From the sequence record MG592456.1: a stretch of DNA of 64,000 nucleotides. One strand, written 5' to 3'. Below, one piece after another: positions 14,701 to 29,732 of the stretch. Position 1 is the stretch's first letter; each line of letters begins with the position of its first letter. The notes beneath the pieces are model-generated. The model searched no databases, was not told the origin of the DNA, and worked only from the letters and a program-made list of their open reading frames with translations. Made by a program: the position numbers and the translations under genes.

Positions 14701-16134
14701 TTAAACGTCGTAGCGCTCAACATTAACTGTTTTTAACATGATCTTGACTGGCTCAAGTTCACCGCCCAACAACGAGGTCAGGATTGACGGACTACAGCCT
14801 GATACAAGTGCAGTACCCGCAGTTCCTGTTTTAACAGGGACGTTGCCCGCTCTTGCGTGAATATTCCAGAACACTAGCTGTGGCATGTCGTAACCATGAC
14901 GAGCATAATTCGACTTAATTTCGTCGAAATTGGTTTTATTAGAGGAGCGCCACCCCGCGCTATTCGCCGTGTCGAATTCCATGTCGCTCAAGATTAGCAT
15001 CTTAGTCGGCATTTCACTCTGAGGCAAGTTAGCGCTTGTTGCTCGTTCAAGCAACACATTAAAGCAGCCGCTAATGTTAGTACTCATGTCTTCACCAGCA
15101 CGTGACATGTTGGCTAAACGAGTTTGCAAATTATCACCGATTAACTTGTGAAAGTTAGGGCGACTTGAGAATGTAACGAACTGGTCTTGGAAGACGCCTT
15201 CGTTGCGCTCTGCAATGTAGATACCAAGACTCATAGCGACGTCTTTGCAAGATACACCATCGCCATATGAGTCAGCGCCGTTAATACCACAACCCATAGA
15301 GCCTGATACATCAACTACGGGTAGAATGCGCTCGTCTGAGCCTTCCATGTAGTTCGGAAGTGCTTTCCATTGCTCATTCGCAACAACGGCATTGCCGCGA
15401 CTAACACTACGCACGACATCATATGGGTATACAGCACCCGCATTAATCTTCGCTTCGCCCTTCACAAGTGATTCGATGTAGCTAGAATACTTATCAGTTG
15501 CATTGCGACCGAACGATTTTTGATAGCGTGCTGAAGCTACAGACGGCAACTTACCAAAGTCGATCGCATCCCATTCACGCGCACACATTTTCTGCTCGAC
15601 GGTGTCTGACAATGTACTAAGAATCTTGCGCCATTGCTTTGACTTAATACCAAGAGACTTGATAGTTTTCTTAAACACATGACCGTTTGCGCTACCTTCA
15701 CGAGGGAACCACTTTGCAGCTAACGAGTTTTTATCGTTGACGATTGCATGAGTCCACAATGTGATTGCATCAGCCTCAAGATCTGTACCAAATGCACACA
15801 TCAAGTCATCGAAACGACCCAATTCTGGCACTTTAGACATCACAACACGTGCAATATCAGGGCGATTGACACACAAGCGAGTAAAGATCTTACGGAAAGT
15901 TTGACGTTCCCCAGCTCCACCGCGTACATCACGTGCCCATAGCAAGATTCGAGTTGCCAGCTCAGGATTTTCACCGAATGCTCGATCGAACATACCAAGT
16001 GACTCGTTATTACCACGCATCGCGCCAATAGTAAAAAACAAGTTTAGACACTCGTTGCCTGAAGTGCTGTGAGTCACTGCACCATTTGCGGTACGTGCAT
16101 CGTTTGTTTGCATTGCGTTTAAAAAAGCTGACAT
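14701..16134 (-). CDS. DUF2828 family protein (TROVE-like helical region plus vWA domain; Ro60-like architecture)
   Basis: RDVRGGAGER, KWFPRE, KINAGAVYPYDVV, vWA MIDAS DVSGSM, ILSDMEFD, VFWN. Confidence 0.85.
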   Translation of the reverse strand: MSAFLNAMQTNDARTANGAVTHSTSGNECLNLFFTIGAMRGNNESLGMFDRAFGENPELATRILLWARDVRGGAGERQTFRKIFTRLCVNRPDIARVVMSKVPELGRFDDLMCAFGTDLEADAITLWTHAIVNDKNSLAAKWFPREGSANGHVFKKTIKSLGIKSKQWRKILSTLSDTVEQKMCAREWDAIDFGKLPSVASARYQKSFGRNATDKYSSYIESLVKGEAKINAGAVYPYDVVRSVSRGNAVVANEQWKALPNYMEGSDERILPVVDVSGSMGCGINGADSYGDGVSCKDVAMSLGIYIAERNEGVFQDQFVTFSSRPNFHKLIGDNLQTRLANMSRAGEDMSTNISGCFNVLLERATSANLPQSEMPTKMLILSDMEFDTANSAGWRSSNKTNFDEIKSNYARHGYDMPQLVFWNIHARAGNVPVKTGTAGTALVSGCSPSILTSLLGGELEPVKIMLKTVNVERYDV

Positions 16135-16169
16135 TTTATAATTCCCTAATTTGTTTGCTGTTTAATGTC
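16130..16169 (-). promoter_or_regulatory. CAGCAA-motif leader hairpin sequestering the DUF2828 RBS and start codon
   Basis: GACAUU-AAA-CAGCAAAC-AAAUU-AGGGA(SD)-AUUAUAA-AAUGUC; the closing strand contains the AUG. Confidence 0.7.
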
Positions 16170-16181
16170 GTTAATGAAGTG

Positions 16182-16210
16182 ATTATACATGAATTATCAT
16201 GCGTGTAAAC
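16182..16210 (-). promoter_or_regulatory. T4-type early promoter
   Basis: GTTTAC-N17-TATAAT. Confidence 0.85.
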
Positions 16211-16217
16211 AACTTTA

Positions 16218-16547
16218 TCAACACGAAAGACTATTTCCTCTAGTTTTCATTGTCCCGTTTTTGTCAATAACGATCAAGTAAGACCCGTTAGTGGTTCGAT
16301 TAACATGAACACTTAAATATCCGTGGTCGTTGAGATATTTCCGTATGATATTCATTGCCATTGAAGTCCCATCGTCTTTACTGTGAATACTCACTTTAAG
16401 CTTTATGGGGAAATCGATGGTCGGATTATGAGCAATTTCTGATGCCATTGCATTTTCAACTTCCGCAGTGTAATGTTCTTGCATCGTCGAGCGCAGCGAT
16501 TCGACGCGCTGTTCAATTTGTAATTTTAATTCGCCGTGTTTAATCAT
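16218..16547 (-). CDS. hypothetical protein
   Basis: 109-aa ORF overlapping the upstream stop. Confidence 0.7.
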   Translation of the reverse strand: MIKHGELKLQIEQRVESLRSTMQEHYTAEVENAMASEIAHNPTIDFPIKLKVSIHSKDDGTSMAMNIIRKYLNDHGYLSVHVNRTTNGSYLIVIDKNGTMKTRGNSLSC

Positions 16548-16788
16548 GTAACGTCCCTTGAAATTTCTTTAACATTCGATTACTAAAGTCATCTGCGTGT
16601 TCATTACCGAGCACATCGACACTTTCCCAAATATATGCATTACGGAGATCTTGCCCAACTGTGTGATGATAATCGATAACATCACACGTTTTAAAATGCT
16701 CGGCGGTTTCGGCGTCGGCATAAGTAAACGCCTTGCGCAAGAAGCTCATGCACAGTTCTTCTAAATTTTCAATTGATTTCGCGCTCAT
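16540..16788 (-). CDS. hypothetical protein
   Basis: 82-aa ORF in an operon. Confidence 0.7.
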   Translation of the reverse strand: MSAKSIENLEELCMSFLRKAFTYADAETAEHFKTCDVIDYHHTVGQDLRNAYIWESVDVLGNEHADDFSNRMLKKFQGTLHD

Positions 16789-16913
16789 GTATAACCCATC
16801 AAGTTAAGTTTCATTCGAATATATTAATCGAATACTCACGAAAACACAAGCATTATTTTCAATCAGACACAAAAAAGCCCCTTTCGGGGCTAATTTAGGC
16901 ATTTATTATTGTG

Positions 16914-18335: not shown

Positions 18336-18431
18336 TGTCTTTCCTTTTTTTCATGAATGTACTATATTTAGATTAACTGATCCATTGACCGTCAATAAAC
18401 TAACAGTTTATCCGTAAAAAGAAGGGATGTA

Positions 18432-18776: not shown

Positions 18777-18782
18777 TTTGTA

Positions 18783-19022
18783 TTATTCCAACCAATAGTT
18801 TAAATCAAATGCAGACTCTAGGATCGGGTTACATGATAACCAGTACTTTAGAGGCTGCCCTTTACTTTCGAGTGTGACTACACCGTCTCGCTCCGTCACT
18901 TGATAAATCAATTGACCGTCGATGGATGCATCAATAAACCCCGAGCGTGGGTGTACACTAACAGTGAATCCATGTTCTTTAAACAGAGATTGCACGACGT
19001 GACTTTCCTTTTTAAGATTCAT
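18783..19022 (-). CDS. hypothetical protein
   Basis: AGAG RBS before MNLKK; the longer annotated N-terminus overlaps the opposite-strand gene. Confidence 0.65.
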   Translation of the reverse strand: MNLKKESHVVQSLFKEHGFTVSVHPRSGFIDASIDGQLIYQVTERDGVVTLESKGQPLKYWLSCNPILESAFDLNYWLE

Positions 19023-19083
19023 ATTATTCTCTATAATGTGTCTGATAAATACAAAGATACAGTAATAACGAGTGAGTGTCAAC

Positions 19084-20765: not shown

Positions 20766-20914
20766 AGACATCGGTGCAAGTTTTCGATACATTGCAATCG
20801 GATCCGAGTCATTTCCTACTCATCACACCGAGGGCGAACATTATCGCTGAGAAAGCAGCTAGTTGCCCATATTACTTTTATAGTTTAGTTTTTATTAGTT
20901 GCTGAAAAATGTCT
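20766..20914 (-). ncRNA. CAGCAA-motif RNA, long form
   Basis: AGACAUU-UUU-CAGCAACU ... GAUGUCU closing helix; follows tRNA-Ser and precedes a terminator. Confidence 0.5.
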
Positions 20915-20927: not shown

Positions 20928-21016
20928 TGGCAGAGATAGTGGGAGTCGAACCCACACAGCGCTATTAACACCGGACGCCTTAGCAGGGCGTTGACATACC
21001 GTTAGTCCATATCTCT
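20928..21016 (-). tRNA. trnS: tRNA-Ser(GCT)
   Basis: cloverleaf, ACGCC-CTGCTAA-GGCGT, long variable arm, CCA. Confidence 0.95.
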
Positions 21017-21225
21017 GTAATTTTCCACCATTGTGGTTGACACACTGCCCAATCCCAAGTGCCGTGACTAAACCATGTAGCTTTCCTTGCTGGCATGTCT
21101 AGTTCCCTTGCTGGCTCACGGTCTACATACGAATACCTTTTCGCTTTACGCCGATACCATTGCAATTTAAAGACCCCGCATTCAGGTCTATTCACCATCT
21201 TTCGATTCGCATTGCTAGGTGAATT

Positions 21226-21302
21226 TGGTGCGTGTAGAGAGATTCGAACTCTCACATTCTAGCGTTTGAAGCTAGCGACTCTGCCAATTGGCCTATACAC
21301 GC
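21226..21302 (-). tRNA. trnL: tRNA-Leu(CAA), short variable loop
   Basis: CTAGC-TTCAAAC-GCTAG, A73, CCA. Confidence 0.9.
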
Positions 21303-21384
21303 TTTGTCTTACTTGCATTCACTATACTATGCTTTATACAAGTGTTAAACAATTTATTTGAATTAAATTCAAATCTTTCTAAAT

Positions 21385-21461
21385 TGGTGCGCGTAAGCGG
21401 AGTCGAACCGCTATCAAAGAGATTTTAAATCTCCCACCTCTGCCAATTGGATCATACGCGC
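21385..21461 (-). tRNA. trnL: tRNA-Leu(TAA), short variable loop
   Basis: GGAGA-TTTAAAA-TCTCT, A73, CCA. Confidence 0.9.
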
Positions 21462-21512
21462 AAAGTTTGTTCTGTCATTAGTACTTATAACTATACTTTT
21501 GACGTTTGAATT

Positions 21513-21588
21513 TGGAGCTGGTACGCAGAATCGAACTGCGACCTAAGGATTTGCAATCCCCTATCCTACCTGATTAGACCATAGGAGC
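21513..21588 (-). tRNA. trnC: tRNA-Cys(GCA) with two C:C mismatches in the acceptor stem
   Basis: GGGGA-TTGCAAA-TCCTT, U73, CCA; the 5' end overlaps the endonuclease ORF. Confidence 0.75.
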
Positions 21589-22197
21589 ATGTTTACAATT
21601 ATCAAAGTGCCACCGTTTCATAACACCGCCCTTGCCAACTTTACCACAATGAGGACACGTGACTTCATCAATCGAGTGTTCTTCATAATGCCTCTTCAAA
21701 CTCTCTGAAATTTTTTGCTTTTGTGATTCAGTCTTATCTTGTTTGCCAATCTTTATACCATGTTCGACCGCCGCAGCATAACGCTCTTCGCCACGTTTTA
21801 CCCAATAATTATCAGCGTACTTCTCTCTGATTTTATCACTCACCGCACGACCAGACAACGTTTTAGAAATTTTCGCCTTAGATTCATCAGTGTGTGGTAT
21901 CCCACTACGATTAAGATGGTCGAACCCACCTTCACCACCCAACTTCAGATTATATGTCATGGAGTTTTCTACAAACTCACGATCAACATACACAGCCTCA
22001 CGCTCGTACATTTCATCAGAACTGTCACATTGTTCTAGAATTTCACACTCGAAGCTATCAACGCCATACTTGTTAATTGCACGTTTCAGAAGCTTACCGG
22101 ATCCGATATACCCATCTTCTAGGTCTTCGGTTTTGTGTGCTCCGATGTAGATCTTACCATTGGTTTTATTAGTGGTTTTATAAACAATATAATACAT
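21574..22197 (-). mobile_element. free-standing Seg-like GIY-YIG homing endonuclease gene with NUMOD3 and C-terminal CPHC..RWHFDNC domain
   Basis: IVY-KTTN..NGKIYIG..K...GYIGSG..L..AI.KYG..F..EIL; inserted in the tRNA cluster as T4 segB is. Confidence 0.85.
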
Positions 22198-22203
22198 ATC
22201 AAA

Positions 22204-22252
22204 CTCCTATACTATTATTTATAATAGTAGTATAAGAGTTTAACAATGTCAA
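22204..22252 (-). promoter_or_regulatory. homing-endonuclease control region: late promoter inside an SD-sequestering hairpin plus a sigma70 promoter
   Basis: TATAAATA at 22216-22223 within the stem ACTATTAT/ATAATAGT, which extends into AGG of the SD; TTGACA-N17-TACTAT at 22224-22252. Confidence 0.65.
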
Positions 22253-22267
22253 TAAAAAAAGAATACC

Positions 22268-22385
22268 TAGGTTGAGCGGAACAGCGTGCAATAATCAATA
22301 GAATTCAAGTATGACTCTACCTATGCGCATCACCGTCTACTATGTCGGGCTATCCATTATGCCCCGTGATGCAATTCCAAACCTA
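22268..22385 (-). ncRNA. unidentified structured RNA
   Basis: nested helices UAGGUU/AACCUA, GGAA/UUCC, GCAUCAC/GUGAUGC, GGGC/GCCC; no ORF; U tract after it. Confidence 0.5.
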
Positions 22386-22563
22386 ATTAGCTCTGTTTAG
22401 TCGTTTTAGTCCTCGACGATATCCAGTCTCGCTTTATCGAATCTCTTCGATATAACTACTATACATCTTGATACAACGACAATAAACAACTATTTTCATT
22501 TAATTTCACTTTTCAGAATAAAATTAAAAAAAAAGGATAATCTTTCGATTATCCTTAAATGAT

Positions 22564-22655
22564 GTGCATTGCTCGGCTTACTGGCGATCTTAATGGGTAT
22601 TTCAAGCATACAGAATTTCCGAGCGCTACTACAATGCTTTTTTCGCTAAATGCAC
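22564..22655 (-). ncRNA. unidentified structured RNA directly 3' of tRNA-His
   Basis: GUGCAUU/AAUGCAC and GCUCGG/CCGAGC helices. Confidence 0.45.
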
Positions 22656-22657
22656 TT

Positions 22658-22734
22658 TGGGGTGACCGACGGGACTCGAACCCGCAACCGCCATCTTCAC
22701 AGGATGGAGCTCTCCCAGTTGAGCTACGGCCACA
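22658..22734 (-). tRNA. trnH: tRNA-His(GTG)
   Basis: CCATC-CTGTGAA-GATGG, C73, CCA; the genomic -1 base is T, not G. Confidence 0.93.
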
Positions 22735-22747
22735 CCAAAGTACACTT

Positions 22748-22822
22748 TGGTAGTTCTGGAGAATTTCGAAATCTCGACTTCTTCCTTGTAAGGGAAGCAC
22801 TCTGCCTCTGAGTTACAGAACT
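22748..22822 (-). tRNA. trnV: tRNA-Val(TAC)
   Basis: CTTCC-CTTACAA-GGAAG, CCA. Confidence 0.95.
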
Positions 22823-22986
22823 ATTCTTTTAGAATAAAATATAGGATAAATCCAGAACACACGAATCATTTTAACTTCGTAAGTTGGCGCATGACGATTG
22901 TCACAATTATACAGTGTCAATACATTGAAAAACTGCCACCACTTATCAGGCTTAACGTATTTCTTCGAATTATCATAAAGATTCAT
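22813..22986 (-). CDS. small hypothetical protein (57 aa)
   Basis: GAGA RBS, MNLYDNSKK...; the stop falls in the 5' end of tRNA-Val. Confidence 0.55.
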   Translation of the reverse strand: MNLYDNSKKYVKPDKWWQFFNVLTLYNCDNRHAPTYEVKMIRVFWIYPIFYSKRIVL

Positions 22987-23002
22987 ATTATATTCTCAAT
23001 TA

Positions 23003-23190
23003 AATTGAAGTGATGTGCCGAGTTAGCGGAGTACTGTTTCAACCCTCTGGGTCTCGCCTGCACATCATTATCCCACACGTTACTTTACTTCAAAAACATC
23101 GCTCATCGTCGCGTGTATACTTCAATTCAGCATAAGCCTCTCTTCCGATATACAAGCGGAAGTTACATTTGATTCTCCACGACATTGAGC
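23003..23190 (-). ncRNA. unidentified structured, possibly pseudoknotted RNA
   Basis: helices AAUUGAAGU/ACUUCAAUU, GAUGUGC/GCACAUC, CUUCCG/CGGAAG, GCUCA/UGAGC. Confidence 0.55.
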
Positions 23191-23195
23191 AAATT

Positions 23196-23271
23196 TGGAG
23201 CAGGAGACGAGATTCGAACTCGCGGCTTCCGACGTGGAAGGACGGCACTCTACCAATTGAGTTACACCTGC
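23196..23271 (-). tRNA. trnG: tRNA-Gly(TCC)
   Basis: CCGTC-CTTCCAC-GTCGG, U73, CCA. Confidence 0.93.
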
Positions 23272-23497
23272 TTTAAAACTTTAGAATTAAGTATTTTATA
23301 CACGAATATCAGGTTCGTGTCAATCTGAAGCATTAAACAAATCTTGAATTGCTTTCAAGTTTGCTAGCTCTACTTTAAGTGCTCTTATAAAGAACGGGTT
23401 TGACTCATAAAAAAGTCTGTCTTCAACATCACGTATTTGCACACGAATGTTGCCCTTGCTTAGTGTAAAGTAATCATGCTTCTTTTCCTTTAGAATT

Positions 23498-23573
23498 TGG
23501 TAGTGCCACTGACAATCGAAGTCAGAACTGAACCGTTATGAGCGGTCCGCTATGCCACTTTAGCTACAGCACC
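23498..23573 (-). tRNA. tRNA(CAT), elongator Met or Ile2
   Basis: GACCG-CTCATAA-CGGTT, A73, CCA. Confidence 0.85.
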
Positions 23574-23876
23574 ATTGTAGCAACTATTAGTTGCTATGGA
23601 TATCAAGATACAGATAATCACGAAGTGTTTTATCGTCTTTTGCTTTAATCGCGGTTGACTATTCACTTTATTCGCTAGTGAAAGCTATCGCCTGATTCAG
23701 TGACGCACCTATTCTCATGTTTCCATAAGAAGATATCTTTCTCTTGAGACAATGCAAGCACTATCCGAGTTAAGATGATCACTTTGAGTATGATTATTTT
23801 TTGCGGTACATTATCTTACTCAACATATGCGCCATGCCGAAGCAGAGGGATCACAGTATGATGAGCTTCTTAATTT

Positions 23877-23952
23877 TGGTACGCCTACTAGGATTCGAAC
23901 CTAGACTTCAACCTTAGAAGGGTCGAGTGCTCGTCCATTACACCATAAGCGC
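23877..23952 (-). tRNA. trnR: tRNA-Arg(TCT)
   Basis: CGACC-CTTCTAA-GGTTG, CCA. Confidence 0.93.
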
Positions 23953-24032
23953 TTTGTAAAAAACTATTCCATAAGCTGTCATCGAAGATGATAGTAAGTG
24001 AAAATTCGATACTCATGTGAATAGTGTTAAAT

Positions 24033-24108
24033 TGGTGGAGACGGTCGGAGTCGAACCGACAACAGTCTGCGTGCAAGGCAAACTCGCTCCCTCAGTACAT
24101 GCGTCCCC
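24033..24108 (-). tRNA. trnA: tRNA-Ala(TGC), irregular D arm
   Basis: G3:U70, A73, TTTGC-CTTGCAC-GCAGA, CCA. Confidence 0.9.
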
Positions 24109-24115
24109 AATTTGT

Positions 24116-24337
24116 TTATGATAGATTAGCGACTACTGCTTCACTCCAGCCATATAGCTCATCAAGTTCGTCTGCATCGTCAATGCCAGTATCTTTTAAC
24201 AGACTAGATATGACCATCTGCTCGATTTCGTCAGACGTTGCGTCCGCTGCCACTGAATATACTTCTTCGTTGTTATTGCCACCGAATTGACCACCGAAGT
24301 CATATTCACACCAAACTTGGATATATTTTAAGCTCAT
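24116..24337 (-). CDS. small acidic hypothetical protein
   Basis: 73-aa ORF with GAGA RBS between tRNAs. Confidence 0.7.
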   Translation of the reverse strand: MSLKYIQVWCEYDFGGQFGGNNNEEVYSVAADATSDEIEQMVISSLLKDTGIDDADELDELYGWSEAVVANLS

Positions 24338-24359
24338 ATATTTCTCACATAATTAAAAA

Positions 24360-24433
24360 TGGTGCTTCTAGGCGGACTCGAACTGCCACGACTTGATTAC
24401 AAAACAAGCATACTGCCATTATATTATAGAAGC
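24360..24433 (-). tRNA. trnT: tRNA-Thr(TGT)
   Basis: CTTGT-TTTGTAA-TCAAG, CCA. Confidence 0.9.
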
Positions 24434-24438
24434 GAATC

Positions 24439-24543
24439 TGAGTGTGTATTTACCAGCGCACCAGCGTGCATACCAAGCACTGCGAGAATCGAACTCGCGC
24501 CGTTCGTGTAAAAGACGAATTTGTTGTTTGCTGTAAACACTCA
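24439..24543 (-). ncRNA. circularly permuted tRNA mimic (YrlA-like) with CAGCAA motif and Lys anticodon loop
   Basis: terminal helix UGAGUGU/ACACUCA, UUA-CAGCAAAC, UUCGU-CUUUUAC-ACGAA, GCGAG-UUCGAUU-CUCGC T arm, loop-closed GUGC/GCAC acceptor-like stem, D-like arm; no CCA. Confidence 0.8.
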
Positions 24544-24551
24544 ATAGTATT

Positions 24552-24625
24552 TGGCAGGTCTAATAGGGTTCGAACCTATACCACGTCTGTCAAAGAGACG
24601 GGTGCTTCCATTACACCATAGACCT
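24552..24625 (-). tRNA. trnQ: tRNA-Gln(TTG)
   Basis: CGTCT-CTTTGAC-AGACG, G73, CCA. Confidence 0.95.
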
Positions 24626-24647
24626 AAATTTATTCATAAATGATTTT

Positions 24648-24723
24648 TGGCAGAGCCGACGGGTTTCGATCCCGCTACCTTCGCTGTGACAGAGCGATGT
24701 TCTACCGATTGAACTACGGCTCT
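24648..24723 (-). tRNA. trnD: tRNA-Asp(GTC)
   Basis: TCGCT-CTGTCAC-AGCGA, G73, CCA; T loop ATCGAAA; the leader pairs with CCA and trailer. Confidence 0.93.
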
Positions 24724-24766
24724 CCAAAAATCACTTTGGGATGCTTAACTGTGCATCAACAGAATT

Positions 24767-24841
24767 TGGCAGGGGTACAAGGACTCGAACCCTGACGAGC
24801 GGATTTGGAATCCGCCATGCTACCATTGACATCACACCCCT
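24767..24841 (-). tRNA. trnW: tRNA-Trp(CCA)
   Basis: GCGGA-TTCCAAA-TCCGC, G73, CCA. Confidence 0.95.
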
Positions 24842-24855
24842 ATGTACTTTAAAAC

Positions 24856-24929
24856 TGGTAGTCTCACAGAGACTTGAACTCTGACCGTTCGGTTATCAGC
24901 CGAGTGCTCTACCATTGAGCTATGAGACT
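24856..24929 (-). tRNA. trnI: tRNA-Ile(GAT)
   Basis: CTCGG-CTGATAA-CCGAA, CCA. Confidence 0.93.
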
Positions 24930-24933
24930 AAAT

Positions 24934-25020
24934 TGGCGGAAGAATAGAGATTCGAACTCTAATGCCCATTTCTGAACGTCGGTTTTCAAGACCGGTGCAA
25001 TACCATTATGCGATTCTTCC
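24934..25020 (-). tRNA. trnS: tRNA-Ser(TGA)
   Basis: CCGGT-CTTGAAA-ACCGA, long variable arm, G73, CCA. Confidence 0.95.
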
Positions 25021-25026
25021 ATTGTT

Positions 25027-25103
25027 TGGTTGCGTGAGGGTAGATTCGAACTACCGACCTTTAGCTTATGAGGCTAACGAGCTGACCACTGCTCTACTCC
25101 GCA
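25027..25103 (-). tRNA. trnM: tRNA-Met(CAT), initiator-like D arm, bulged acceptor stem
   Basis: TTAGC-CTCATAA-GCTAA, CCA; acceptor 3' strand is 8 nt. Confidence 0.85.
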
Positions 25104-25119
25104 TTTGTATCTTAATTTG

Positions 25120-25308
25120 TTACTTTTCGAACTGAACTTTACATGCGTCTGACTCAAAAACAAACTTACCAGTCGCATTTTCTTGAATCTCGACTGTACA
25201 TCGTTTAGTATCAAGCTCACCACTTGTTGTTACATCTTTAACTGTGATGCCAGATGCAGCACATGCAGTCAATGATAATGCCATTACAATTGCAGCAATA
25301 AATTTCAT
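25120..25308 (-). CDS. small lipoprotein
   Basis: MKFIAAIVMALSLTAC lipobox. Confidence 0.8.
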   Translation of the reverse strand: MKFIAAIVMALSLTACAASGITVKDVTTSGELDTKRCTVEIQENATGKFVFESDACKVQFEK

Positions 25309-25327
25309 GTAAAACCTTTTCTGAATT

Positions 25328-25413
25328 TGGTGGTTCACCTAGGACTCGAACCTAGAATACCCGTTAGGGTGGAGGATTTACAATCCCCTGACTTACCATT
25401 AGTCTAATGAACC
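25328..25413 (-). tRNA. trnY: tRNA-Tyr(GTA)
   Basis: GGGGA-TTGTAAA-TCCTC, long variable arm, CCA. Confidence 0.95.
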
Positions 25414-25418
25414 GAATG

Positions 25419-25492
25419 TGGTGCTCTATACGGGAGTCGAACCCGTCTCTTCACATTGAAAGTGTGATGACCTACCGATAGTCGAATAGAGC
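25419..25492 (-). tRNA. trnE: tRNA-Glu(TTC)
   Basis: TCACA-CTTTCAA-TGTGA, CCA. Confidence 0.95.
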
Positions 25493-25586
25493 AAAAAAAA
25501 TATTTTTTAATGAAACAAGCAAGTCATTTGATTTTCATCGAATTGATCATTTAACGGGCCCAGCTTCTTTCACTAAAAGATATTTT

Positions 25587-25721
25587 CTAATATCCCTTTA
25601 ATCTTTGTCTCTGTCTAGCAGCCTTTAACTTAGCACGCTGACCGTATTGCTTTTCTAGTTTAGCACCATGATAACTATGATACTGATAATGACAAGATAA
25701 TTTCTTATAAAGACCTTTCAT
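25587..25721 (-). CDS. small basic hypothetical protein
   Basis: GGGGG RBS before MKGLYKK. Confidence 0.55.
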   Translation of the reverse strand: MKGLYKKLSCHYQYHSYHGAKLEKQYGQRAKLKAARQRQRLKGY

Positions 25722-25747
25722 ATACCCCCCTAGATTTTGATTATAAC

Positions 25748-25805
25748 AGAATGCGTTTTGCTTGAAAGCCAATTTTCAAATTTTGTTGTTTGCTGAATAC
25801 ATTCT
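25748..25805 (-). ncRNA. minimal CAGCAA-motif RNA with Glu-type anticodon loop
   Basis: AGAAUGU-AUU-CAGCAAAC...UUGG-CUUUCAA-GCAA...GCAUUCU. Confidence 0.7.
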
Positions 25806-25836
25806 TAATCTATCACAAGACTCACGCCTTGAAATT

Positions 25837-25911
25837 TGGTGCACCCTCGCAGACTCGAACTGCGTACCTCGGGACTTCAATCCGATGCTTTTCCTGTTAA
25901 GCTAAAGGTGC
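25837..25911 (-). tRNA. trnF: tRNA-Phe(GAA), atypical anticodon arm
   Basis: TCGGA-TTGAAGT-CCCGA (A31:C39, G37), short variable loop, CCA. Confidence 0.8.
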
Positions 25912-25912
25912 T

Positions 25913-25987
25913 TGGTGCGTCGCCTGAGATTTGAACTCAGACCAACTTGGTTAAAAGCCAAGTGTACTACCATTATACTAACGACGC
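25913..25987 (-). tRNA. trnK: tRNA-Lys(TTT)
   Basis: CTTGG-CTTTTAA-CCAAG, CCA. Confidence 0.95.
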
Positions 25988-26003
25988 ATTTGTTACTTTA
26001 ATA

Positions 26004-26078
26004 TGGCGCTGATGGAGAATTTCGAAATCTCGACCTGAGAGTTAACAGCTCCCTGCTCTGCCTCTGAGCTACATCAGC
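26004..26078 (-). tRNA. trnN: tRNA-Asn(GTT)
   Basis: GGGAG-CTGTTAA-CTCTC, G73, CCA. Confidence 0.95.
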
Positions 26079-26084
26079 TAAATT

Positions 26085-26161
26085 TGGTGCGCATGGAGAG
26101 ACTCGAACTCTCAACTTCTGGTTTCTAAAACCAGTGACTCTGCCAATTGGCCTACACGCGC
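26085..26161 (-). tRNA. trnL: tRNA-Leu(TAG), short variable loop
   Basis: CTGGT-TTTAGAA-ACCAG, A73, CCA. Confidence 0.9.
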
Positions 26162-26423
26162 TTTGTTCTTTGTGTTAGTTTCGAACGTTTCATCGTTCTT
26201 AGCTATTGTACACGTTGTTTTCGTTAATGTAAACATCTTTTTTACTTTTATTTGAAGTAGTTAATGTTTTCATTTTCGAGTGTTTATATTAACACTGATT
26301 AAGAACGTATTAAACAAATCATTTAATAAACTGTTAAATTCTATCTCACGACAGTAGATAACATGATACGGTCCTAAGCGTATCAAAACTACAAGTGACA
26401 GTCAATGACTATCGCTTTAAAAT

Positions 26424-26501
26424 TGGTACACCATATAAGATTCGAACTTATAACCTTTCCCTTCGTAGGGGAGTGCTCTATTCCAGTTGAGCTAATGGTG
26501 C
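26424..26501 (-). tRNA. trnR: tRNA-Arg(ACG)
   Basis: CTCCC-CTACGAA-GGGAA, CCA. Confidence 0.93.
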
Positions 26502-26602
26502 ATTGACGACTTTACGGCACTATGAATAGTGAGTCGTCACCGTAAACTTCGGGAGAAGTTATTCTTATCTGACTCGATTAAACTAATCAAATCAACTGTA
26601 TA

Positions 26603-26680
26603 TGGTCCGGATAGAAGGATTCGAACTTTCGACTTCATCGTCCCAAACGATGCGCTCTGGCCTGACTGAGCTATACCCGG
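26603..26680 (-). tRNA. trnP: tRNA-Pro(TGG)
   Basis: CATCG-TTTGGGA-CGATG, A73, CCA. Confidence 0.95.
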
Positions 26681-27089
26681 ATTATCTTGTAACTTAGTTT
26701 ATTATACTCAACTTTCGAATACATTAAACTAAATTTTAGACATAAAAAAAGACGCTAATTAGCGTCCTAGAGTATTGGAAATATACTTTCGGACTATTTG
26801 TGGATATCCCACTTCTGTTCATTAATCGGATTCGCTAGATACACGGATTCTAGGCGCATAAACGTGCCGCGATGTCCTTTAAATGTATTTGCAATCGAAT
26901 CTTTCATGATTTCTCTCTGAACGTAATTAAAATGTTTTGTTTCTATAATAGTACTTATAACACTAAAATCGACGATTCGTGTTATTTTAGCAATAAACCG
27001 CAAATAAATTGCATTTATTTTAAAAAAATTGTGCTCCGTGTGGACTTTAACCACTCCAACCGTCGAAGCTAACGGTTATTCAAACTGAA

Positions 27090-27419
27090 CTAGCCGTATG
27101 TTCTATCAGCAATGATTAGCAAATTACCAGGCATAATACCCATAGTTGACTCTTTATATGGCTTAACTCTATCTAACCAGCGAGTTTTCGCTAATATATG
27201 ACCACCAAGAACTGACAAAATTGCATAACCACTATCAAACCCATCAGGTTGTATTCGCAATTGCTCAATCTGTTTCATCAAGTCAGTGACCCAATGTACT
27301 TGGTCTCCTTCCGTAACGACGTACACACCGGGCGGTAAGAAACGTTTAGTCTTGATACCATATTCTCTTGAAACACGAAGCAAGCTTTCATGAAGCGCTA
27401 CATTGTTAAATTCAATCAT
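27090..27419 (-). CDS. hypothetical protein
   Basis: 109-aa ORF with AGAG RBS. Confidence 0.7.
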   Translation of the reverse strand: MIEFNNVALHESLLRVSREYGIKTKRFLPPGVYVVTEGDQVHWVTDLMKQIEQLRIQPDGFDSGYAILSVLGGHILAKTRWLDRVKPYKESTMGIMPGNLLIIADRTYG

Positions 27420-27459
27420 GTAATATACTCTACCGTAAAAACATATTTATACTGATAAA

Positions 27460-27990
27460 CTATCGCAATTTGAACGCGAGATTTCGATACTGAGAGCTGC
27501 GTTTATTCTTGATTGAATGGAACTTAGCCCAGTCAATCTTAATCGGGCAATTTTTGCTGCCGATACGTGCTAAAAACACATTTTCGCGCGGATACTTTTC
27601 TTGATATTCAGAAATTCTCTTCTGCAACCCAGCCGCATACTTACCACAAGCTCTGTTATAGTCAGTCTTTGAAAACTTACCATCACGAGTTTTGTTTACG
27701 TCATAGTTAACTGACGGTCTATAAACCCGCGCTTCAGTCGATGACCAGCCCATATTGAAGCTATATTCAACTTCAGCACGAAGAACACCTGTATCTCGAT
27801 TTCGTGCTAACACGACCCATCCACGAGTTCTAGTGAAGTCTTTAAACGTATGCGTCTTGTCATAATTCTGATGACGGTTGTTATACAAGTTACGAAGAAC
27901 TGTTTTAACATCACTCGACATAGAGTCACGCTGTTCTTTAGTGAACGCAATTCCAAATCGTTGTAACTTTATCTGTAGTTTAGGTTTCAT
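27460..27990 (-). CDS. basic hypothetical protein
   Basis: GAGA RBS before MKPKLQ; the annotated upstream extension overlaps an RNA element. Confidence 0.7.
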   Translation of the reverse strand: MKPKLQIKLQRFGIAFTKEQRDSMSSDVKTVLRNLYNNRHQNYDKTHTFKDFTRTRGWVVLARNRDTGVLRAEVEYSFNMGWSSTEARVYRPSVNYDVNKTRDGKFSKTDYNRACGKYAAGLQKRISEYQEKYPRENVFLARIGSKNCPIKIDWAKFHSIKNKRSSQYRNLAFKLR

Positions 27991-28006
27991 AATAATATTC
28001 TCTTGT

Positions 28007-28242
28007 CGCCCACAAGAGGACTCGAACCTCTTTCTAACACAACACATCATCAACCCGATCAGGGTTTCGAAGTAAGAACTAATCAGCATATCAGATCATA
28101 AAGAGCATTATTTACGTCCGCAGATTCGACTCCACTCGCGATTTTTGACTCTAGGCTCGGTGATTCATCACGAAACGAGATAATTAATCAAGCTTTGTGG
28201 TAATGTCGAGCAAACACTGCGTATAGTACACCTGTTGCGGGC
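28007..28242 (-). ncRNA. ~236-nt tRNA-like RNA (acceptor stem and T arm around a large insert)
   Basis: GCCCGCA/UGUGGGC acceptor-like stem, AAGAGG-UUCGAGU-CCUCUU T arm, no encoded CCA. Confidence 0.6.
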
Positions 28243-28406
28243 ATTGTTAAGTTATCAAGTCTGTCTCGACTTGAACTTCATTATTTCATACTTGAATCTT
28301 AAATACAAGCTTTATTTTAAAAAAAATCAGGATTAATGTGAGACTTCTGCGTGTATTAAGCATCTTCCCGATGCACCTGAACACTATTTACATTCTCACT
28401 TTAAAT

Positions 28407-28482
28407 TGGTGGCCCACGATCGGATTCGAACCGATAACCCTACAGTTATGAGCTGTGCGCACTACCATTGTGCTACGGGGCC
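28407..28482 (-). tRNA. tRNA(CAT), Ile2-like acceptor (GGCCCC), bulged acceptor stem
   Basis: CACAG-CTCATAA-CTGTA, A73, CCA. Confidence 0.85.
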
Positions 28483-29064: not shown

Positions 29065-29077
29065 TTGATCCCCTATA

Positions 29078-29221
29078 TTTCATTATGGCAGATCGCACTC
29101 GTTCGAACGTCCCCAGTTAGCTCTTTCGAAGTTTCGCGAATTTCGAGCGTGAGCGGCGTGGAGTTGCTTCTGTGCTTATTCATGACTTATCACCACGAAC
29201 AAATGCGTTCCCATAATGAAA
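29078..29221 (-). ncRNA. unidentified structured RNA
   Basis: 11-bp UUUCAUUAUGG/CCAUAAUGAAA helix plus a 12-bp inner helix containing G:U pairs. Confidence 0.55.
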
Positions 29222-29230
29222 CATTAAAAT

Positions 29231-29354
29231 TGGTGGAGAGAGCGGGATTCGAACCACGCGACCGAAAGATTTACTTAGTTAAAAGTTTGCAGTAGGCATT
29301 CTTGTCAGAATACACATAACATTCTTTTGCTCTACCAGACTGAGCTATCTCTCC
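29231..29354 (-). ncRNA. tRNA body with CAGCAA-type insert in the anticodon arm
   Basis: GGAGAGA/UCUCUCC-A-CCA, D arm, bulged T arm; insert GUAUUCU-GACA-AGAAUGC-CUA-CUGCAAAC. Confidence 0.75.
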
Positions 29355-29402
29355 ATTTGCAGCGCTGTGTTTACTGCATGAACACAGCGCCAATACTTCT
29401 CA

Positions 29403-29533
29403 TATGCCTAACCAACTATACACAACCCAAAATCGTGCGCTGGAAGCATCGATACATCAAACATCGACACGTAAGCAGTTGGTGCGATATACGCGCACAC
29501 CCATTCTTCCAAAAGTTCTGAGGCATACAGAAC
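29403..29533 (-). ncRNA. pseudoknotted structured RNA
   Basis: the hairpin loop UAUGCCU is complementary to AGGCAUA ~110 nt downstream; ACCAACU/AGUUGGU helix. Confidence 0.55.
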
Positions 29534-29588
29534 GATATTCATGAGTGCGAGTAAAAATTCAAACATTTTCACCCCACTTAGTATTAGT

Positions 29589-29732
29589 GAGAGTGCATTG
29601 AGCGGGGTGCAGGAATCGAACCTGCGTCACGATCTTTGAAGGATATGCGTTTTGGTTGCTGAATACAAGCTTGTCAGCTTGCGTTTAGCTACGTGTGTTA
29701 TCCACTACACCAACCCCGCTCAATGCACTCTC
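29589..29732 (-). ncRNA. tRNA body with CAGCAA insert, UCA anticodon-like loop and 20-bp extended acceptor helix
   Basis: GCGGGGU/ACCCCGC, D and T arms; GCAAGCU-GACA-AGCUUGU-AUU-CAGCAACC; AUC-CUUCAAA-GAU; no CCA. Confidence 0.75.

What the first reader, a model, noticed from the sequence alone, without database searches (positions are those of the whole stretch)
14701..29732. Candidate phage Ro60/Y-RNA-like system: a DUF2828 protein plus a six-member family of CAGCAA-motif tRNA mimics
Seen in sequence: one motif recurs six times on the minus strand with the same geometry, a 6-7 bp helix, exactly 3 nt, then C(A/U)GCAA(A/C)(C/U), then an A-rich (once U-rich) linker. The copies are at 16130-16169 (DUF2828 leader), 20766-20914, 24439-24543, 25748-25805, 29231-29354 and 29589-29732. 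The helix sequence differs between copies but pairing is kept, which indicates selection on RNA structure. Three copies show anticodon-type loops (Lys UUU, Glu UUC, UCA) and three have tRNA D/T arms. Established knowledge: bacterial Ro60 (Rsr, TROVE plus vWA) binds Y RNAs; YrlA-class Y RNAs are permuted tRNA mimics; Rsr acts with PNPase in RNA decay and sits in the tRNA-damage-induced rsr-yrl-rtcBA operon. Inference: DUF2828 is a divergent Ro60-like ring that binds the CAGCAA module, and the RNAs present anticodon loops as decoys for host anticodon nucleases (PrrC/RloC/PARIS-type) or serve tRNA repair or quality control. I am not aware of a description of this pairing but could not search for one.
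Basis: partly seen in the sequence, partly recalled or inferred. Interest (0 to 1): 0.93.

Follow-up and report, generated by a model that had tools for sequence, protein, structure and literature searches.

The report
Phage Ro60-like protein with Y-RNA partners
This vibriophage encodes a ring-shaped Ro60-like RNA-binding protein and at least seven small structured RNAs sharing a "stem, three bases, CAGCAA" module, a pairing that recurs in very diverse phages and looks like an undescribed branch of the Ro60/Y-RNA system.

Summary
I found a seventh copy (23612-23816, CCGCAA variant).

The window is Vibrio phage 1.081.O (KVP40-like). Its DUF2828/DUF7788 protein has a Ro60 fold: the ten best PDB matches are all Ro60/TROVE proteins.

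The RNA module is not a local curiosity. The consensus is a 7-bp stem (AG...CU), then N-U-W, then C-A-G-C-A-A, with an invariant G after the 3' strand. It lies beside DUF2828 genes, always on the gene strand, in many phage groups:
- T4-like vibriophages, Felix O1-like coliphages and Campylobacter phages;
- Listeria, Enterococcus and Mycobacterium phages;
- most of 114 metagenomic or genome-bin loci.

The stems covary strongly. Some members carry permuted tRNA-like domains that score as weak YrlA matches. E5 and E6 are unpermuted tRNA scaffolds with the module in the anticodon position.

The most likely explanation is that these RNAs are Y-RNA-like partners of a divergent phage Ro60. The copy in the mRNA leader may allow autoregulation.

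The anticodon-nuclease decoy idea has no support, because the loop sequences are not conserved. Binding and expression are untested.

I found no published description of the RNA family. One preprint had guessed that such RNAs exist.

The parts
14701..16134 (-). Gene for a 477-aa DUF2828 + DUF7788 protein, a Ro60-like HEAT-repeat ring plus vWA domain
   Evidence: Pfam DUF7788 E 5.9e-43 and DUF2828 E 6.2e-27. AlphaFold2 model with pLDDT 79.6 and pTM 0.79. Foldseek PDB ranks 1-10 are all Ro60/TROVE, E 1e-7 to 3e-6, TM 0.47-0.64. MIDAS residues D275-x-S277-x-S279, T352 and D384 are invariant in 46 homologues.
16182..16209 (-). Promoter-like site (TTTACA-16-TATAAT) upstream of the gene
   Evidence: Matches 11 of 12 consensus positions. 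This is a consensus match only.
16127..16169 (-). E1: partial copy of the module in the mRNA leader. GACAUU-aaa-CAGCAAAC-(Shine-Dalgarno region)-AAUGUC, with the start codon inside the 3' strand
   Evidence: Sequence. The same arrangement is conserved in VH7D, D525 and VS1. It lacks two family invariants, the U in the spacer and the G after the 3' strand.
14672..14696 (-). Intrinsic-terminator-like hairpin just after the stop codon
   Evidence: 10-bp stem followed by a T run.
20766..20914 (-). E2: 149-nt module RNA, last element of the tRNA array
   Evidence: Stem AGACAUU/GAUGUCU, spacer uuu, CAGCAACU. Orthologues in VH7D, D525 and VS1 keep AGACAUU-gua-CAGCAA and the 3' strand AAUGUCU. A terminator-like site follows at 20730-20750.
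23612..23816 (-). AGAUAAU-gua-CCGCAAAA ... AUUAUCU-g
   Evidence: Orthologous to the AGACAAUA-ua-CAGCAA RNA of CZ01, VS1, D525 and VH7D. C at motif position 2 occurs in 3 of 66 family members.
24438..24544 (-). E3: module RNA with a T arm and a degenerate permuted tRNA-like body
   Evidence: Rfam tRNA scores 34.9 bits on 24474-24542. Orthologues keep the stem, the motif and a T arm of changed sequence.
25748..25805 (-). E4: minimal 58-nt module RNA (terminal stem, motif, A-rich loop, small hairpin)
   Evidence: Covariance model R1 scores 51.3 bits, E 2.5e-10, but E4 is a seed member. Orthologues have a different stem (AGUAAUC/GAUUACU) with pairing kept.
29231..29354 (-). E5: unpermuted tRNA-like RNA with the hairpin-plus-CUGCAAAC module inserted at the anticodon position; it ends in CCA
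   Evidence: Rfam tRNA 52.1 bits. GenBank annotates a 'tRNA-Asn' of 121 nt, but ARAGORN does not call it. In the 5-sequence alignment 97% of cells pair and 4 pairs show double changes.
29589..29732 (-). E6: tRNA-like RNA with a 20-bp extended acceptor helix and the hairpin-plus-CAGCAACC module
   Evidence: Fold z-score -8.4. In 9 orthologues and paralogues the 20-bp helix pairs in 96.6% of cells (10 pairs with double changes), the module hairpin in 96.8% (5 pairs) and the T arm in 100% (4 pairs).
20928..28482 (-). Array of 26 tRNA genes in which E3, E4 and E7 are embedded. E2 lies at its 3' end, and E5 and E6 lie upstream of it
   Evidence: ARAGORN. E2, E3 and E4 begin 14-40 nt after a tRNA CCA end.
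22564..22655 (-). E8: candidate only. GUGCAUU-ua-GCGAAAAA ... AAUGCAC, carrying a canonical-Y-RNA-like GCGAA motif instead of CAGCAA
   Evidence: A terminator-like site follows at 22533-22556. It is conserved only in VS1 (91%), so membership is uncertain.

Best explanation
The 477-aa DUF2828/DUF7788 protein is a divergent phage Ro60: a HEAT-repeat ring closed by a vWA domain. The CAGCAA-module RNAs are its Y-RNA-like partners.

Shown:
- The protein has the Ro60 fold.
- The RNAs form a conserved family defined by a terminal or local 7-bp helix, a 3-nt spacer with a central U, and single-stranded C-A-G-C-A-A. In the long-range form, G:C is the second pair of the stem and a G follows the 3' strand.
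- The family is encoded next to DUF2828 genes, on the same strand, in phages of Proteobacteria, Campylobacterota, Firmicutes and Actinobacteria.
- The module sits on three scaffolds: a minimal hairpin of about 58 nt (E4), a permuted YrlA-like tRNA mimic (E3, and clearer in Felix O1-like, Enterococcus and Mycobacterium phages), and an unpermuted tRNA body with the module at the anticodon end (E5, E6).

Inferred:
- In this phage the RNAs are co-transcribed with the tRNA array and released by tRNA-processing enzymes.
- The protein binds the helix/CAGCAA junction on its outer surface, as Ro60 binds the 5' strand of the Y-RNA stem.
- The variable or tRNA-like part of each RNA tethers or gates the ring towards host RNA-metabolism or defence factors.
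- The partial module in the gene's own leader, whose helix covers the start codon, lets excess protein repress its own translation.
For: Fold:
- Foldseek ranks 1-10 are Ro60 from Xenopus, Deinococcus and Thermus phage phiLo. The next hits are isolated vWA domains with E > 0.01.
- The MIDAS motif is invariant.

Linkage:
- In 48 of 76 IMG/VR loci a stem-plus-motif element starts 0-700 nt after the stop codon, against 1-4 of 76 for six decoy cores.
- 60 elements fall in the first 500 nt after the gene, against 1-10 in any other 500-nt bin.
- Covariance model R1 finds 77 hits at E <= 0.05 in 1.43 Mb, all on the gene strand; 57 of them are not seed members.
- An independent set gives 34 hits in 245 kb, all on the gene strand and all within about 700 nt of the gene.

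Reverse test:
- A gene-blind pattern scan of IMG/VR gave 63 matches whose free stem positions pair.
- Of the 14 matches with at least 8 kb of upstream flank, 10 have DUF2828 in the held stretch, all on the same strand. An eleventh lies on a contig known to carry the gene.

Structure:
- 98.5% of stem cells pair and 153 cells have changes on both sides, against 26-50% pairing when the partner is slid.
- E5 and E6 helices covary.

Breadth:
- Felix O1-like phage momo, Campylobacter phage PC14 and Aeromonas phage phiWae14.
- Listeria phage AG20, Mycobacterium phage Tourach and Enterococcus phage EFDG1.

Kinship with Y RNA:
- The Rfam YrlA model scores 43-45 bits (E about 1e-7 to 1e-8) and 34 bits on the EFDG1 RNAs.
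- Known phage and bacterial Y RNAs have a 5'/3' stem flanking a loop with a GNCGAA or CGAA motif (PMC4201824; PMC12135203).

Leader mimics:
- Mini-hairpins carrying the motif abut the Shine-Dalgarno sequence in L025, L043, L044, L051, L080, L083 and L086.

Negative controls:
- The T4 and T5 tRNA regions have no R1 hit better than E 0.4 and no DUF2828.
Against: - There are no expression or binding data of any kind. Protein-RNA contact is inferred from genomic linkage alone.
- Sequence-level membership in TROVE fails.
- The motif differs from the canonical Ro60-binding GNCGAA/CGAA.
- Bas63 gp130, the likely Felix O1-type homologue, protected T7 from the Ppl defence when expressed alone, so at least that activity does not need the phage RNAs.
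- The seed of R1 was chosen with a descriptor that demands pairing, and model-fitted alignments lean towards the structure.
- Co-occurrence was measured only on the DNA stretches held, not on whole contigs.
- E1 lacks two family invariants, and its helix cannot covary because one strand is the start codon.
- The individual folds of E1-E4 are not more stable than shuffles.
Confidence: 0.72

Rival explanations
1. The RNAs present anticodon loops as decoys for host anticodon nucleases (PrrC, RloC or PARIS-type), or they serve tRNA repair.
For: - E3 and E6 carry 7-nt loops that read as UUU and UCA in this phage.
- RNA-repair genes lie near DUF2828 in some phages: RtcB 1.2 kb downstream in Listeria phage AG20, and a kinase-like gene plus an RNA ligase about 3.5 kb downstream in L206.
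- LeBron, a mycobacteriophage with a Ro-like gene, also encodes an RNA ligase and a polynucleotide kinase.
Against: - Loop sequences are not conserved. E6 orthologues show UUCAAA, UUCUAA, UUUCCAA, UUCAUAA, UUAGGA and UAGGGA.
- The E3 orthologue loops have no fixed triplet, and some lack U33.
- In the permuted layout the E3 hairpin is at the variable-arm position.
- Most family members are minimal hairpins with no tRNA-like part at all.
Confidence: 0.1
2. The elements are cis-acting parts of transcripts (3'-UTR stabilisers, processing sites or attenuators) and not trans-acting partners of the protein. The linkage to DUF2828 would then reflect regulation of that one mRNA.
For: - In most loci the element lies directly after the stop codon or in the leader next to the Shine-Dalgarno sequence.
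- The leader copy E1 overlaps the start codon.
Against: - In this phage six further copies lie 4.6-15 kb from the gene inside the tRNA array, and the gene has its own terminator.
- Elsewhere, two or three different copies stand in tandem, followed by a separate terminator.
- Members carry T arms, D arms and whole tRNA bodies.
- The 3' strand is followed by an invariant G, not a U tract.
Confidence: 0.1
3. E5 and E6 are ordinary tRNA genes with an intron-like insert, or decaying tRNA pseudogenes, and share the short motif with the other sites by chance.
For: - Rfam tRNA scores 52 bits on E5, and GenBank calls it tRNA-Asn(GTT).
- A GUU triplet in an anticodon-like context is invariant in five phages.
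- E5 ends in CCA.
Against: - The insert itself is conserved, and its hairpin covaries.
- The same hairpin-plus-motif insert occurs in a tRNA-like RNA of Aeromonas phage phiWae14, whose DUF2828 is only 48% identical.
- D525 has C33 and G37 around the GUU.
- The phage already has tRNA-Asn(GTT) at 26004-26078.
- No short non-group-I intron is known in bacterial or phage tRNAs (my own knowledge).
Confidence: 0.05
4. The motif is recognised by some other factor (a host RNA chaperone or RNase, or another phage protein), and DUF2828 is only a frequent neighbour.
For: - Binding is untested.
- gp130 acts without the RNAs in T7.
Against: The hosts span Gram-negative, Gram-positive and actinobacterial lineages. 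The flanking genes differ completely between T4-like, Felix O1-like, Herelleviridae and mycobacterial siphoviruses. DUF2828 is the only shared neighbour seen.
Confidence: 0.08

Closest known systems
Ro60 (Rsr) with Y RNAs YrlA/YrlB in bacteria and cluster C mycobacteriophages (Chen et al. 2014, PMC4201824)
   Same: - Ring-plus-vWA protein fold.
- RNAs encoded within a few hundred bases of the gene on the same strand, often two or three in tandem.
- A stem formed by the RNA ends, with a short conserved single-stranded motif on the 5' side.
- Some members carry a circularly permuted tRNA-like domain with T and D arms; others are minimal, like YrlB.
   Different: - The protein matches Pfam DUF2828/DUF7788, not TROVE.
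- The motif is C-A-G-C-A-A at a fixed 3-nt distance from the stem, instead of GNCGAA.
- The Rfam YrlA model misses all window RNAs and reaches only 34-45 bits (gathering score 69) on the best relatives.
- Unpermuted tRNA scaffolds (E5, E6) and copies scattered through a tRNA array are not described for YrlA.
Thermus phage phiLo phiRo60 with Yrl1/Yrl2 (PMC12135203; PDB 9kop, 9l5y)
   Same: - A phage-encoded Ro60-fold protein, and the top structural match to this one.
- Y-like RNAs lie next to the gene.
- Binding was shown there by EMSA, and the complex attenuates host PNPase.
   Different: phiRo60 is a recognisable TROVE protein, and its RNAs carry CGAA in a bulge. Nothing has been tested for the DUF2828 branch.
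Bas63 gp130 (PhageMaP preprint, 10.1101/2024.10.10.617714)
   Same: - A Felix O1-type phage protein described as Ro60-like and sitting directly upstream of the tRNA genes, as in momo (L006).
- The authors guessed that some 'tRNAs' are Y RNAs.
- Its deletion sensitises the phage to the Ppl defence.
   Different: No RNA was identified there. I infer from synteny, and have not verified by sequence, that gp130 is the DUF2828 homologue.
Stable RNAs of unknown function in phage tRNA clusters (T4 rnaC/rnaD; T5 RNA1, RNA2, RNAI, RNAIII and others)
   Same: Small stable RNAs, partly tRNA-like, embedded between phage tRNA genes.
   Different: None carries the stem-NUW-CAGCAA module, and R1 finds nothing there. 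No DUF2828 gene lies in those regions.
Translational autoregulation by mRNA mimicry of an RNA ligand (ribosomal proteins such as L1 and S8; T4 RegA and gp32)
   Same: A partial copy of the protein's presumed RNA site lies in its own leader and overlaps the ribosome-binding region or start codon (E1).
   Different: The parallel is entirely inferred here. E1 lacks two family invariants.

Membership tests
Ro60 / TROVE proteins | HEAT-repeat toroid closed by a C-terminal vWA domain (three-dimensional fold) | tested here: met
   AlphaFold2 model with pTM 0.79. Foldseek ranks 1-10 are Ro60/TROVE structures aligned over the full length, TM 0.47-0.64, E 1e-7 to 3e-6.
Ro60 / TROVE proteins | Sequence match to the TROVE domain (Pfam PF05731) | tested here: not met
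   Pfam reports only DUF7788 and DUF2828. A 46-sequence profile against PDB sequences reaches TROVE proteins only at E 0.13, and only over the MIDAS segment.
Ro60 / TROVE proteins | vWA MIDAS metal site (DxSxS ... T ... D) | tested here: met
   D275, S277, S279, T352 and D384 are invariant in 46 homologues.
Ro60 / TROVE proteins | Binds Y RNA on the outer surface and misfolded RNA ends in the central hole | not testable with these tools
   This needs EMSA, CLIP or an experimental structure.
Y RNA / YrlA (Rfam RF02553) | Encoded within a few kb of the Ro60 gene on the same strand | tested here: met
   77 of 77 and 34 of 34 model hits are on the gene strand. 60 elements lie within 500 nt after the stop codon. 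In the window itself the RNAs are 4.6-15 kb away, in the tRNA array.
Y RNA / YrlA (Rfam RF02553) | Stem formed by the 5' and 3' ends | tested here: met
   The 7-bp terminal stem pairs in 98.5% of cells, and 6 of 7 pairs show compensatory changes. This is not the layout of E5 and E6, where the helix is a local hairpin.
Y RNA / YrlA (Rfam RF02553) | Conserved Ro60-binding motif GNCGAA(N)G or CGAA on the 5' strand | tested here: not met
   The invariant motif is C-A/u/c-G-C-A-A. Rare variants are CAGCGA (EFDG1) and possibly GCGAA (E8).
Y RNA / YrlA (Rfam RF02553) | Permuted tRNA-like domain (T arm, acceptor-like stem-loop, D arm) | tested here: inconclusive
   It is clear in momo 11401-11525, Tourach 5535-5656 and EFDG1 3437-3558. 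In the window, E3 has a T arm but only a degenerate D region. Most members lack the domain.
Y RNA / YrlA (Rfam RF02553) | Score at or above the Rfam gathering threshold (69 bits) | tested here: not met
   There is no hit on any window RNA. The best relatives score 34-45 bits.
tRNA (for E5 and E6) | Cloverleaf with a 7-nt anticodon loop that decodes a codon | tested here: not met
   The acceptor, D and T arms are present (Rfam 52 bits on E5). However, about 50 nt carrying the module replace the anticodon loop. ARAGORN does not call either RNA, and U33/A37 are not kept in D525.

The most novel reading that the evidence does not exclude
DUF2828 proteins and CAGCAA-module RNAs form a second, phage-specific branch of the Ro60/Y-RNA world. 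The branch is present in over a thousand sequenced phages across at least four bacterial phyla.

Its RNAs use three interchangeable scaffolds:
- a minimal hairpin;
- a permuted tRNA mimic;
- an unpermuted tRNA with the module at the anticodon end.

The particle would act as an RNA-tethered counter-defence or RNA-turnover device (the Ppl phenotype of Bas63 gp130 is a first hint). It would set its own level through a mimic of its RNA site in the mRNA leader.
Probability: 0.35. Interest if true: 0.85.

Novelty: new variant of a known kind. Interest (0 to 1): 0.78.

Why it matters
Ro60 and Y RNAs have been studied for forty years without a settled function in bacteria. Phage versions have so far been examined in only one case, Thermus phage phiLo.

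The DUF2828 family is large. It occurs in 711 of 50,697 phage records, and 7,992 of the 8,000 scored candidates matched in the protein collection. These include model and therapy-relevant phages: Felix O1-like phages, the BASEL phage Bas63, P100/A511-like Listeria phages, Enterococcus and Staphylococcus myoviruses, and cluster L mycobacteriophages.

A defined RNA partner with a six-base invariant motif, a fixed geometry and a 58-nt minimal member turns 'Ro-like, function unknown' into something testable. It allows binding assays, structures, and separate deletions of the RNAs and the protein.

It would also explain some of the unexplained tRNA-like genes and 'tRNA-OTHER' calls in phage tRNA clusters. 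It would further show that tRNA mimicry by Y RNAs can use both circular permutations.

Tried and rejected
- Rfam at gathering and at permissive thresholds on the window gives no family except tRNA on any element. The only YrlA hit (23.6 bits) lies on real tRNAs.
- Single-sequence folding of E1-E4 is not distinguishable from shuffles, so the structure claims rest on comparison, not energy.
- MAFFT on 40 minimal members misaligned the 3' strands (A4). I rebuilt the seed from 20 sequences that anchor at both ends (A5).
- My first descriptor (6-bp stem, one G-U) was far too permissive. The stricter one misses true members whose helix extends through extra G-U pairs (L017 and L022).
- In one search I placed the D stem of E6 one column off (0% paired). 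That helix should be ignored; the other three helices are valid.
- AcrIIIA1, a phage protein that co-purifies with tRNA fragments (PMC11662646), looked like a possible prior description. It is a 10-kDa unrelated protein.
- I considered a MotA-box or promoter reading of the reverse complement (GTTTGCTG). I dropped it because it mismatches the TGCTT core and lies on the non-coding strand (my own knowledge of the T4 consensus).
- E8 (GCGAA variant) is conserved only in VS1, so I did not count it as a member.
- A sequence profile against PDB gave no significant Ro60 hit. Only the fold comparison shows the relationship.

Full report
**What the window is.** Bases 14701-21020 are 100% identical to Vibrio phage 1.081.O._10N.286.52.C2 (MG592456), a 239-kb KVP40-like member of Schizotequatrovirus. 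The minus strand carries 26 tRNA genes between 20928 and 28482. The region is syntenic with the T4 tRNA region, which is flanked by genes 57B, 57A and 1. The ORF at 14701-16134 (477 aa) matches Pfam DUF7788 (E 5.9e-43) and DUF2828 (E 6.2e-27).

**The observation.** All six copies are present as described.
- In E1-E4 the strand just 5' of the motif pairs with a partner 40-150 nt downstream.
- In E5 and E6 the helix is a local hairpin with a GACA loop.
- In every copy three bases separate the helix from C(A/U)GCAA.
- The 8-mer alone is only mildly over-represented: 30 found against 18.3 +/- 3.7 expected.
- A descriptor that adds the stem gives 4 hits on the minus strand of 16.1-29.8 kb, against 0-1 for six permuted cores.
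- Four related vibriophages (VH7D, D525, CZ01, VS1; about 75% identical in the protein) keep the elements, typically starting a few bases after a tRNA CCA end.
It lies at 23612-23816, with CCGCAA in place of CAGCAA, and is orthologous to an AGACAAUA-ua-CAGCAA RNA in the relatives.

**The protein.**
- A 46-sequence alignment gave an AlphaFold2 model with pLDDT 79.6 and pTM 0.79.
- Against the PDB, ranks 1-10 are all Ro60/TROVE structures: Xenopus Ro60 (1yvr, 1yvp, 2i91, 9nfa, 9nep), Deinococcus Rsr (2nvo) and Thermus phage phiLo Ro60 (9kop, 9l5y).
- These are aligned over the whole length, with E 1e-7 to 3e-6 and TM 0.47-0.64. The next hits are isolated vWA domains at E > 0.01.
- The vWA metal site (D275xS277xS279, T352, D384) is invariant.
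- At the sequence level the link is invisible. There is no TROVE hit in Pfam, and a profile reaches phiLo Ro60 only at E 0.13.
- The family is large: 711 of 50,697 phage records, and 7,992 of the 8,000 scored candidates matched in the protein collection.
- It is essentially confined to phages. Only 34 loci were found in 185,579 species genomes, almost all in metagenome bins.
- Mycobacteriophage members are already annotated 'Ro-like RNA-binding protein'.

**The RNA family is general.** I looked next to DUF2828 genes in unrelated phages and found the same module each time.
- Felix O1-like phage momo has four copies in the tRNA array just downstream of the gene. One (11401-11525) has a T arm, an acceptor-like hairpin and a D arm in permuted order.
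- Campylobacter phage PC14 has two copies between tRNA-Tyr and the gene.
- Aeromonas phage phiWae14 has three terminal-stem copies plus an E5-type tRNA-like copy.

In 80 IMG/VR loci found through the protein, the linkage to the gene is strong.
- 48 of 76 loci have a stem-plus-motif element starting 0-700 nt after the stop codon, against 1-4 of 76 for six decoy cores.
- 60 elements fall in the first 500 nt after the gene, against 1-10 in any other 500-nt bin.
- Most of the 18 apparent negatives carry slightly relaxed versions.

A covariance model built from 20 minimal members (A5, R1) gave consistent results.
- It found 77 hits at E <= 0.05 in 1.43 Mb, every one on the gene strand. 57 of these were not in the seed.
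- On that alignment 98.5% of stem cells pair and 153 cells have changes on both sides, against 26-50% pairing when the 3' partner is slid by 1-3 columns.
- An independent set (34 genome-bin loci plus four others, 245 kb) gave 34 hits, all on the gene strand and all within about 700 nt of the gene.

The consensus from 66 distinct sequences is a-A-[A-G-R-W-U-N-N]-n-U-w-C-a-G-C-A-A-w-y ... [N-N-A-W-Y-C-U]-G. The second stem pair (G:C), C1, G3, C4, A5 and A6 of the motif, and the G after the 3' strand are invariant. The spacer U is 97% conserved.

**Reverse test.** I scanned IMG/VR for AAGAAT-N3-T-N-CAGCAA-N28-58-ATTCTGA, without reference to any gene.
- The scan returned 116 stretches. In 63 of the 80 loci returned, the two unconstrained stem positions pair; chance would give about 14%.
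- Many of these loci are short pieces of long contigs.
- Among the 14 with at least 8 kb upstream of the RNA, 10 contain DUF2828, always on the same strand. An eleventh is on a contig already known to carry it.
- The T4 and T5 tRNA regions hold their own stable RNAs of unknown function. They have no DUF2828, no convincing descriptor hit and no R1 hit better than E 0.4.
- That the rest of the T4 and T5 genomes lack the gene is my own knowledge, not tested here.

**Gram-positive hosts and the link to YrlA.**
- Listeria phage AG20 has three tandem module RNAs just upstream of the gene, and an RtcB ligase 1.2 kb downstream.
- Mycobacteriophage Tourach has three just downstream; the middle one has T and D arms.
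- Enterococcus phage EFDG1 has three upstream, two of them permuted tRNA mimics. One has CAGCGA instead of CAGCAA.
- The Rfam YrlA model scores 43-45 and 34 bits on the EFDG1 RNAs (E about 1e-7 to 1e-5). This is well below the gathering score of 69, but it covers the full model.
- Published Y RNAs of bacteria and phages have a terminal stem next to a GNCGAA or CGAA motif and are encoded beside Ro60 on the same strand (PMC4201824; PMC12135203).
- The present family therefore has the same architecture and genomic logic, a different motif and a partner protein from a different Pfam family.

**The window's RNAs in that light.**
- E4 is a textbook minimal member (R1 51 bits, though it is in the seed). 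Its stem (AGAAUGU/GCAUUCU) differs from the orthologous stem in VH7D, CZ01 and VS1 (AGUAAUC/GAUUACU) with pairing kept.
- E2 and E7 are long members.
- E3 has the module, a hairpin, a T arm and a degenerate remainder. By the YrlA layout, its 'UUU' hairpin is the variable-arm stem-loop, not an anticodon arm.
- E5 and E6 are unpermuted tRNA bodies in which the module replaces the anticodon loop.
- Their helices covary. In E6 the 20-bp extended acceptor helix pairs in 96.6% of cells, the module hairpin in 96.8% and the T arm in 100%; in E5, 97% of cells pair overall.
- In both permutations the module ends up at the anticodon end of the L shape.
- The loop that reads UCA in E6 differs in every orthologue. 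The E3-type loops vary and sometimes lack U33. Anticodon mimicry is therefore not conserved.

**Expression signals (consensus matches only).**
- A promoter-like site at 16182-16209 and a terminator-like hairpin at 14672-14696 bracket the gene.
- Another terminator-like site (20730-20750) follows E2 at the end of the tRNA array.

**The leader copy.** E1 places GACAUU-aaa-CAGCAAAC upstream of the Shine-Dalgarno region, and its pairing partner AAUGUC contains the start codon.
- The arrangement is kept in VH7D, D525 and VS1, although the rest of the leader varies.
- In other lineages a 36-40-nt mini-hairpin with the motif abuts the Shine-Dalgarno sequence (L025, L043, L044, L051, L080, L083, L086). 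R1 detects four of these at E 2e-6 to 6e-3.
- This suggests autoregulation by mimicry, but the idea is inferred. E1 lacks the spacer U and the 3' G.

**Function.**
- Shown: the fold, the RNA family, the linkage and the covariation.
- Inferred: the protein binds the helix/CAGCAA junction, and the variable part of each RNA connects the ring to other factors.
- The only experimental hints come from homologues. Deleting Bas63 gp130 sensitises that phage to the Ppl defence. gp130 alone rescues T7 on a Ppl strain, so that activity does not need the phage RNAs.
- That gp130 is the DUF2828 homologue is inferred from its Ro60-like fold and its position directly upstream of the tRNA genes, as in momo.
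- LeBron gp53 (annotated Ro-like, 472 aa) is moderately toxic when overexpressed in M. smegmatis.
- phiLo Ro60 with its Y-like RNAs attenuates host PNPase.

**Novelty.** Full-text searches for DUF2828, Ro-like or Ro60-like with phage, and Y RNA with phage found no description of these RNAs. Rfam 15 has no model that reaches them. The concept of a phage Ro60 with Y RNAs is known, and the Ro60-like nature of this protein family is already in annotations and one preprint. The new elements are:
- the cognate RNA family and its CAGCAA motif and geometry;
- its breadth across phages;
- the unpermuted tRNA scaffolds;
- the leader mimics.

I rate it a new variant of a known kind.

**Caveats.**
- There are no wet-lab data for this family.
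- The seed was selected with a pairing-dependent descriptor.
- Model-fitted alignments favour the modelled helix.
- Co-occurrence was measured on partial contigs.
- There are only two negative-control phages, and only their tRNA regions were examined.

Noticed in passing
window 14134-14691 (-): An RNase H-like (YkuK, PF04308, E 1.8e-16) gene lies directly downstream of the Ro60-like gene. The same neighbour is present in CZ01 and D525. I did not check whether it travels with DUF2828 outside this genus.
   Followed up: partly
window 22564-22655 (-): After tRNA-His there is a 92-nt element: GUGCAUU-ua-GCGAAAAA ... AAUGCAC, followed by a terminator-like hairpin (22533-22556). Its motif resembles the canonical Y-RNA GNCGAA rather than CAGCAA. 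It is conserved only in VS1 (91%).
   Followed up: partly
window 22820-23198 (-) and 28330-28413 (-): Further gene-free stretches after tRNA-Gly and tRNA-Met contain long inverted repeats (for example GAUGUGC...GCACAUC and GUGAGA...UCUCAC) without the motif. They may be additional small RNAs.
   Followed up: no
window 21574-22197 (-): A GIY-YIG/NUMOD3 homing-endonuclease gene sits inside the tRNA array, like segB in the T4 tRNA cluster. In CZ01 (L004 2226-2819) another GIY-YIG gene is inserted just upstream of the Ro60-like gene and has displaced most of its leader.
   Followed up: no
window 16914-18335 (-): A 473-aa protein carries four immunoglobulin-type domains (Ig_3 E 4e-31).
   Followed up: no
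L045, L065, L067, L069, L073, L074, L076 (IMG/VR) and L211 107-457: Several DUF2828 loci carry a phage tmRNA gene 4-8 kb from the gene on the same strand (EFDG1: Rfam tmRNA 140 bits). In those loci, module RNAs also cluster near the tmRNA and tRNA-Met genes.
   Followed up: no
L209 6755-8062; L206 1-362 and 12929-14555: RNA-repair-type genes lie near DUF2828 in some phages: RtcB in Listeria phage AG20, and a CCA-adding-enzyme-family gene, a kinase-like AAA_33 gene and an RNA ligase in L206. This echoes the bacterial rsr-yrl-rtcBA arrangement, but I did not test it statistically.
   Followed up: no
L206 9445-9760: A typical operon layout outside this genus: gene, then a 60-nt minimal module RNA, then a module RNA of about 240 nt starting 3 nt later, then an intrinsic terminator. 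The short-plus-long pair recalls YrlB plus YrlA.
   Followed up: partly
window 25747-25804 and L006 10923-10977: Both minimal module RNAs give weak Rfam hits to Dictyostelium Class I RNA (24.7 and 26.7 bits; gathering score 41.5). That family also has a short terminal stem next to a conserved single-stranded motif. This is probably architectural coincidence.
   Followed up: no
L204 10909-11172; L205 10285-13950: The T4 rnaC/rnaD and T5 RNAI, RNAIII, RNA1, RNA2, RNA2H, RNAIV and RNA3 stable RNAs remain annotated 'unknown function'. They lack the module, so other phage tRNA clusters hold different unexplained RNAs.
   Followed up: partly
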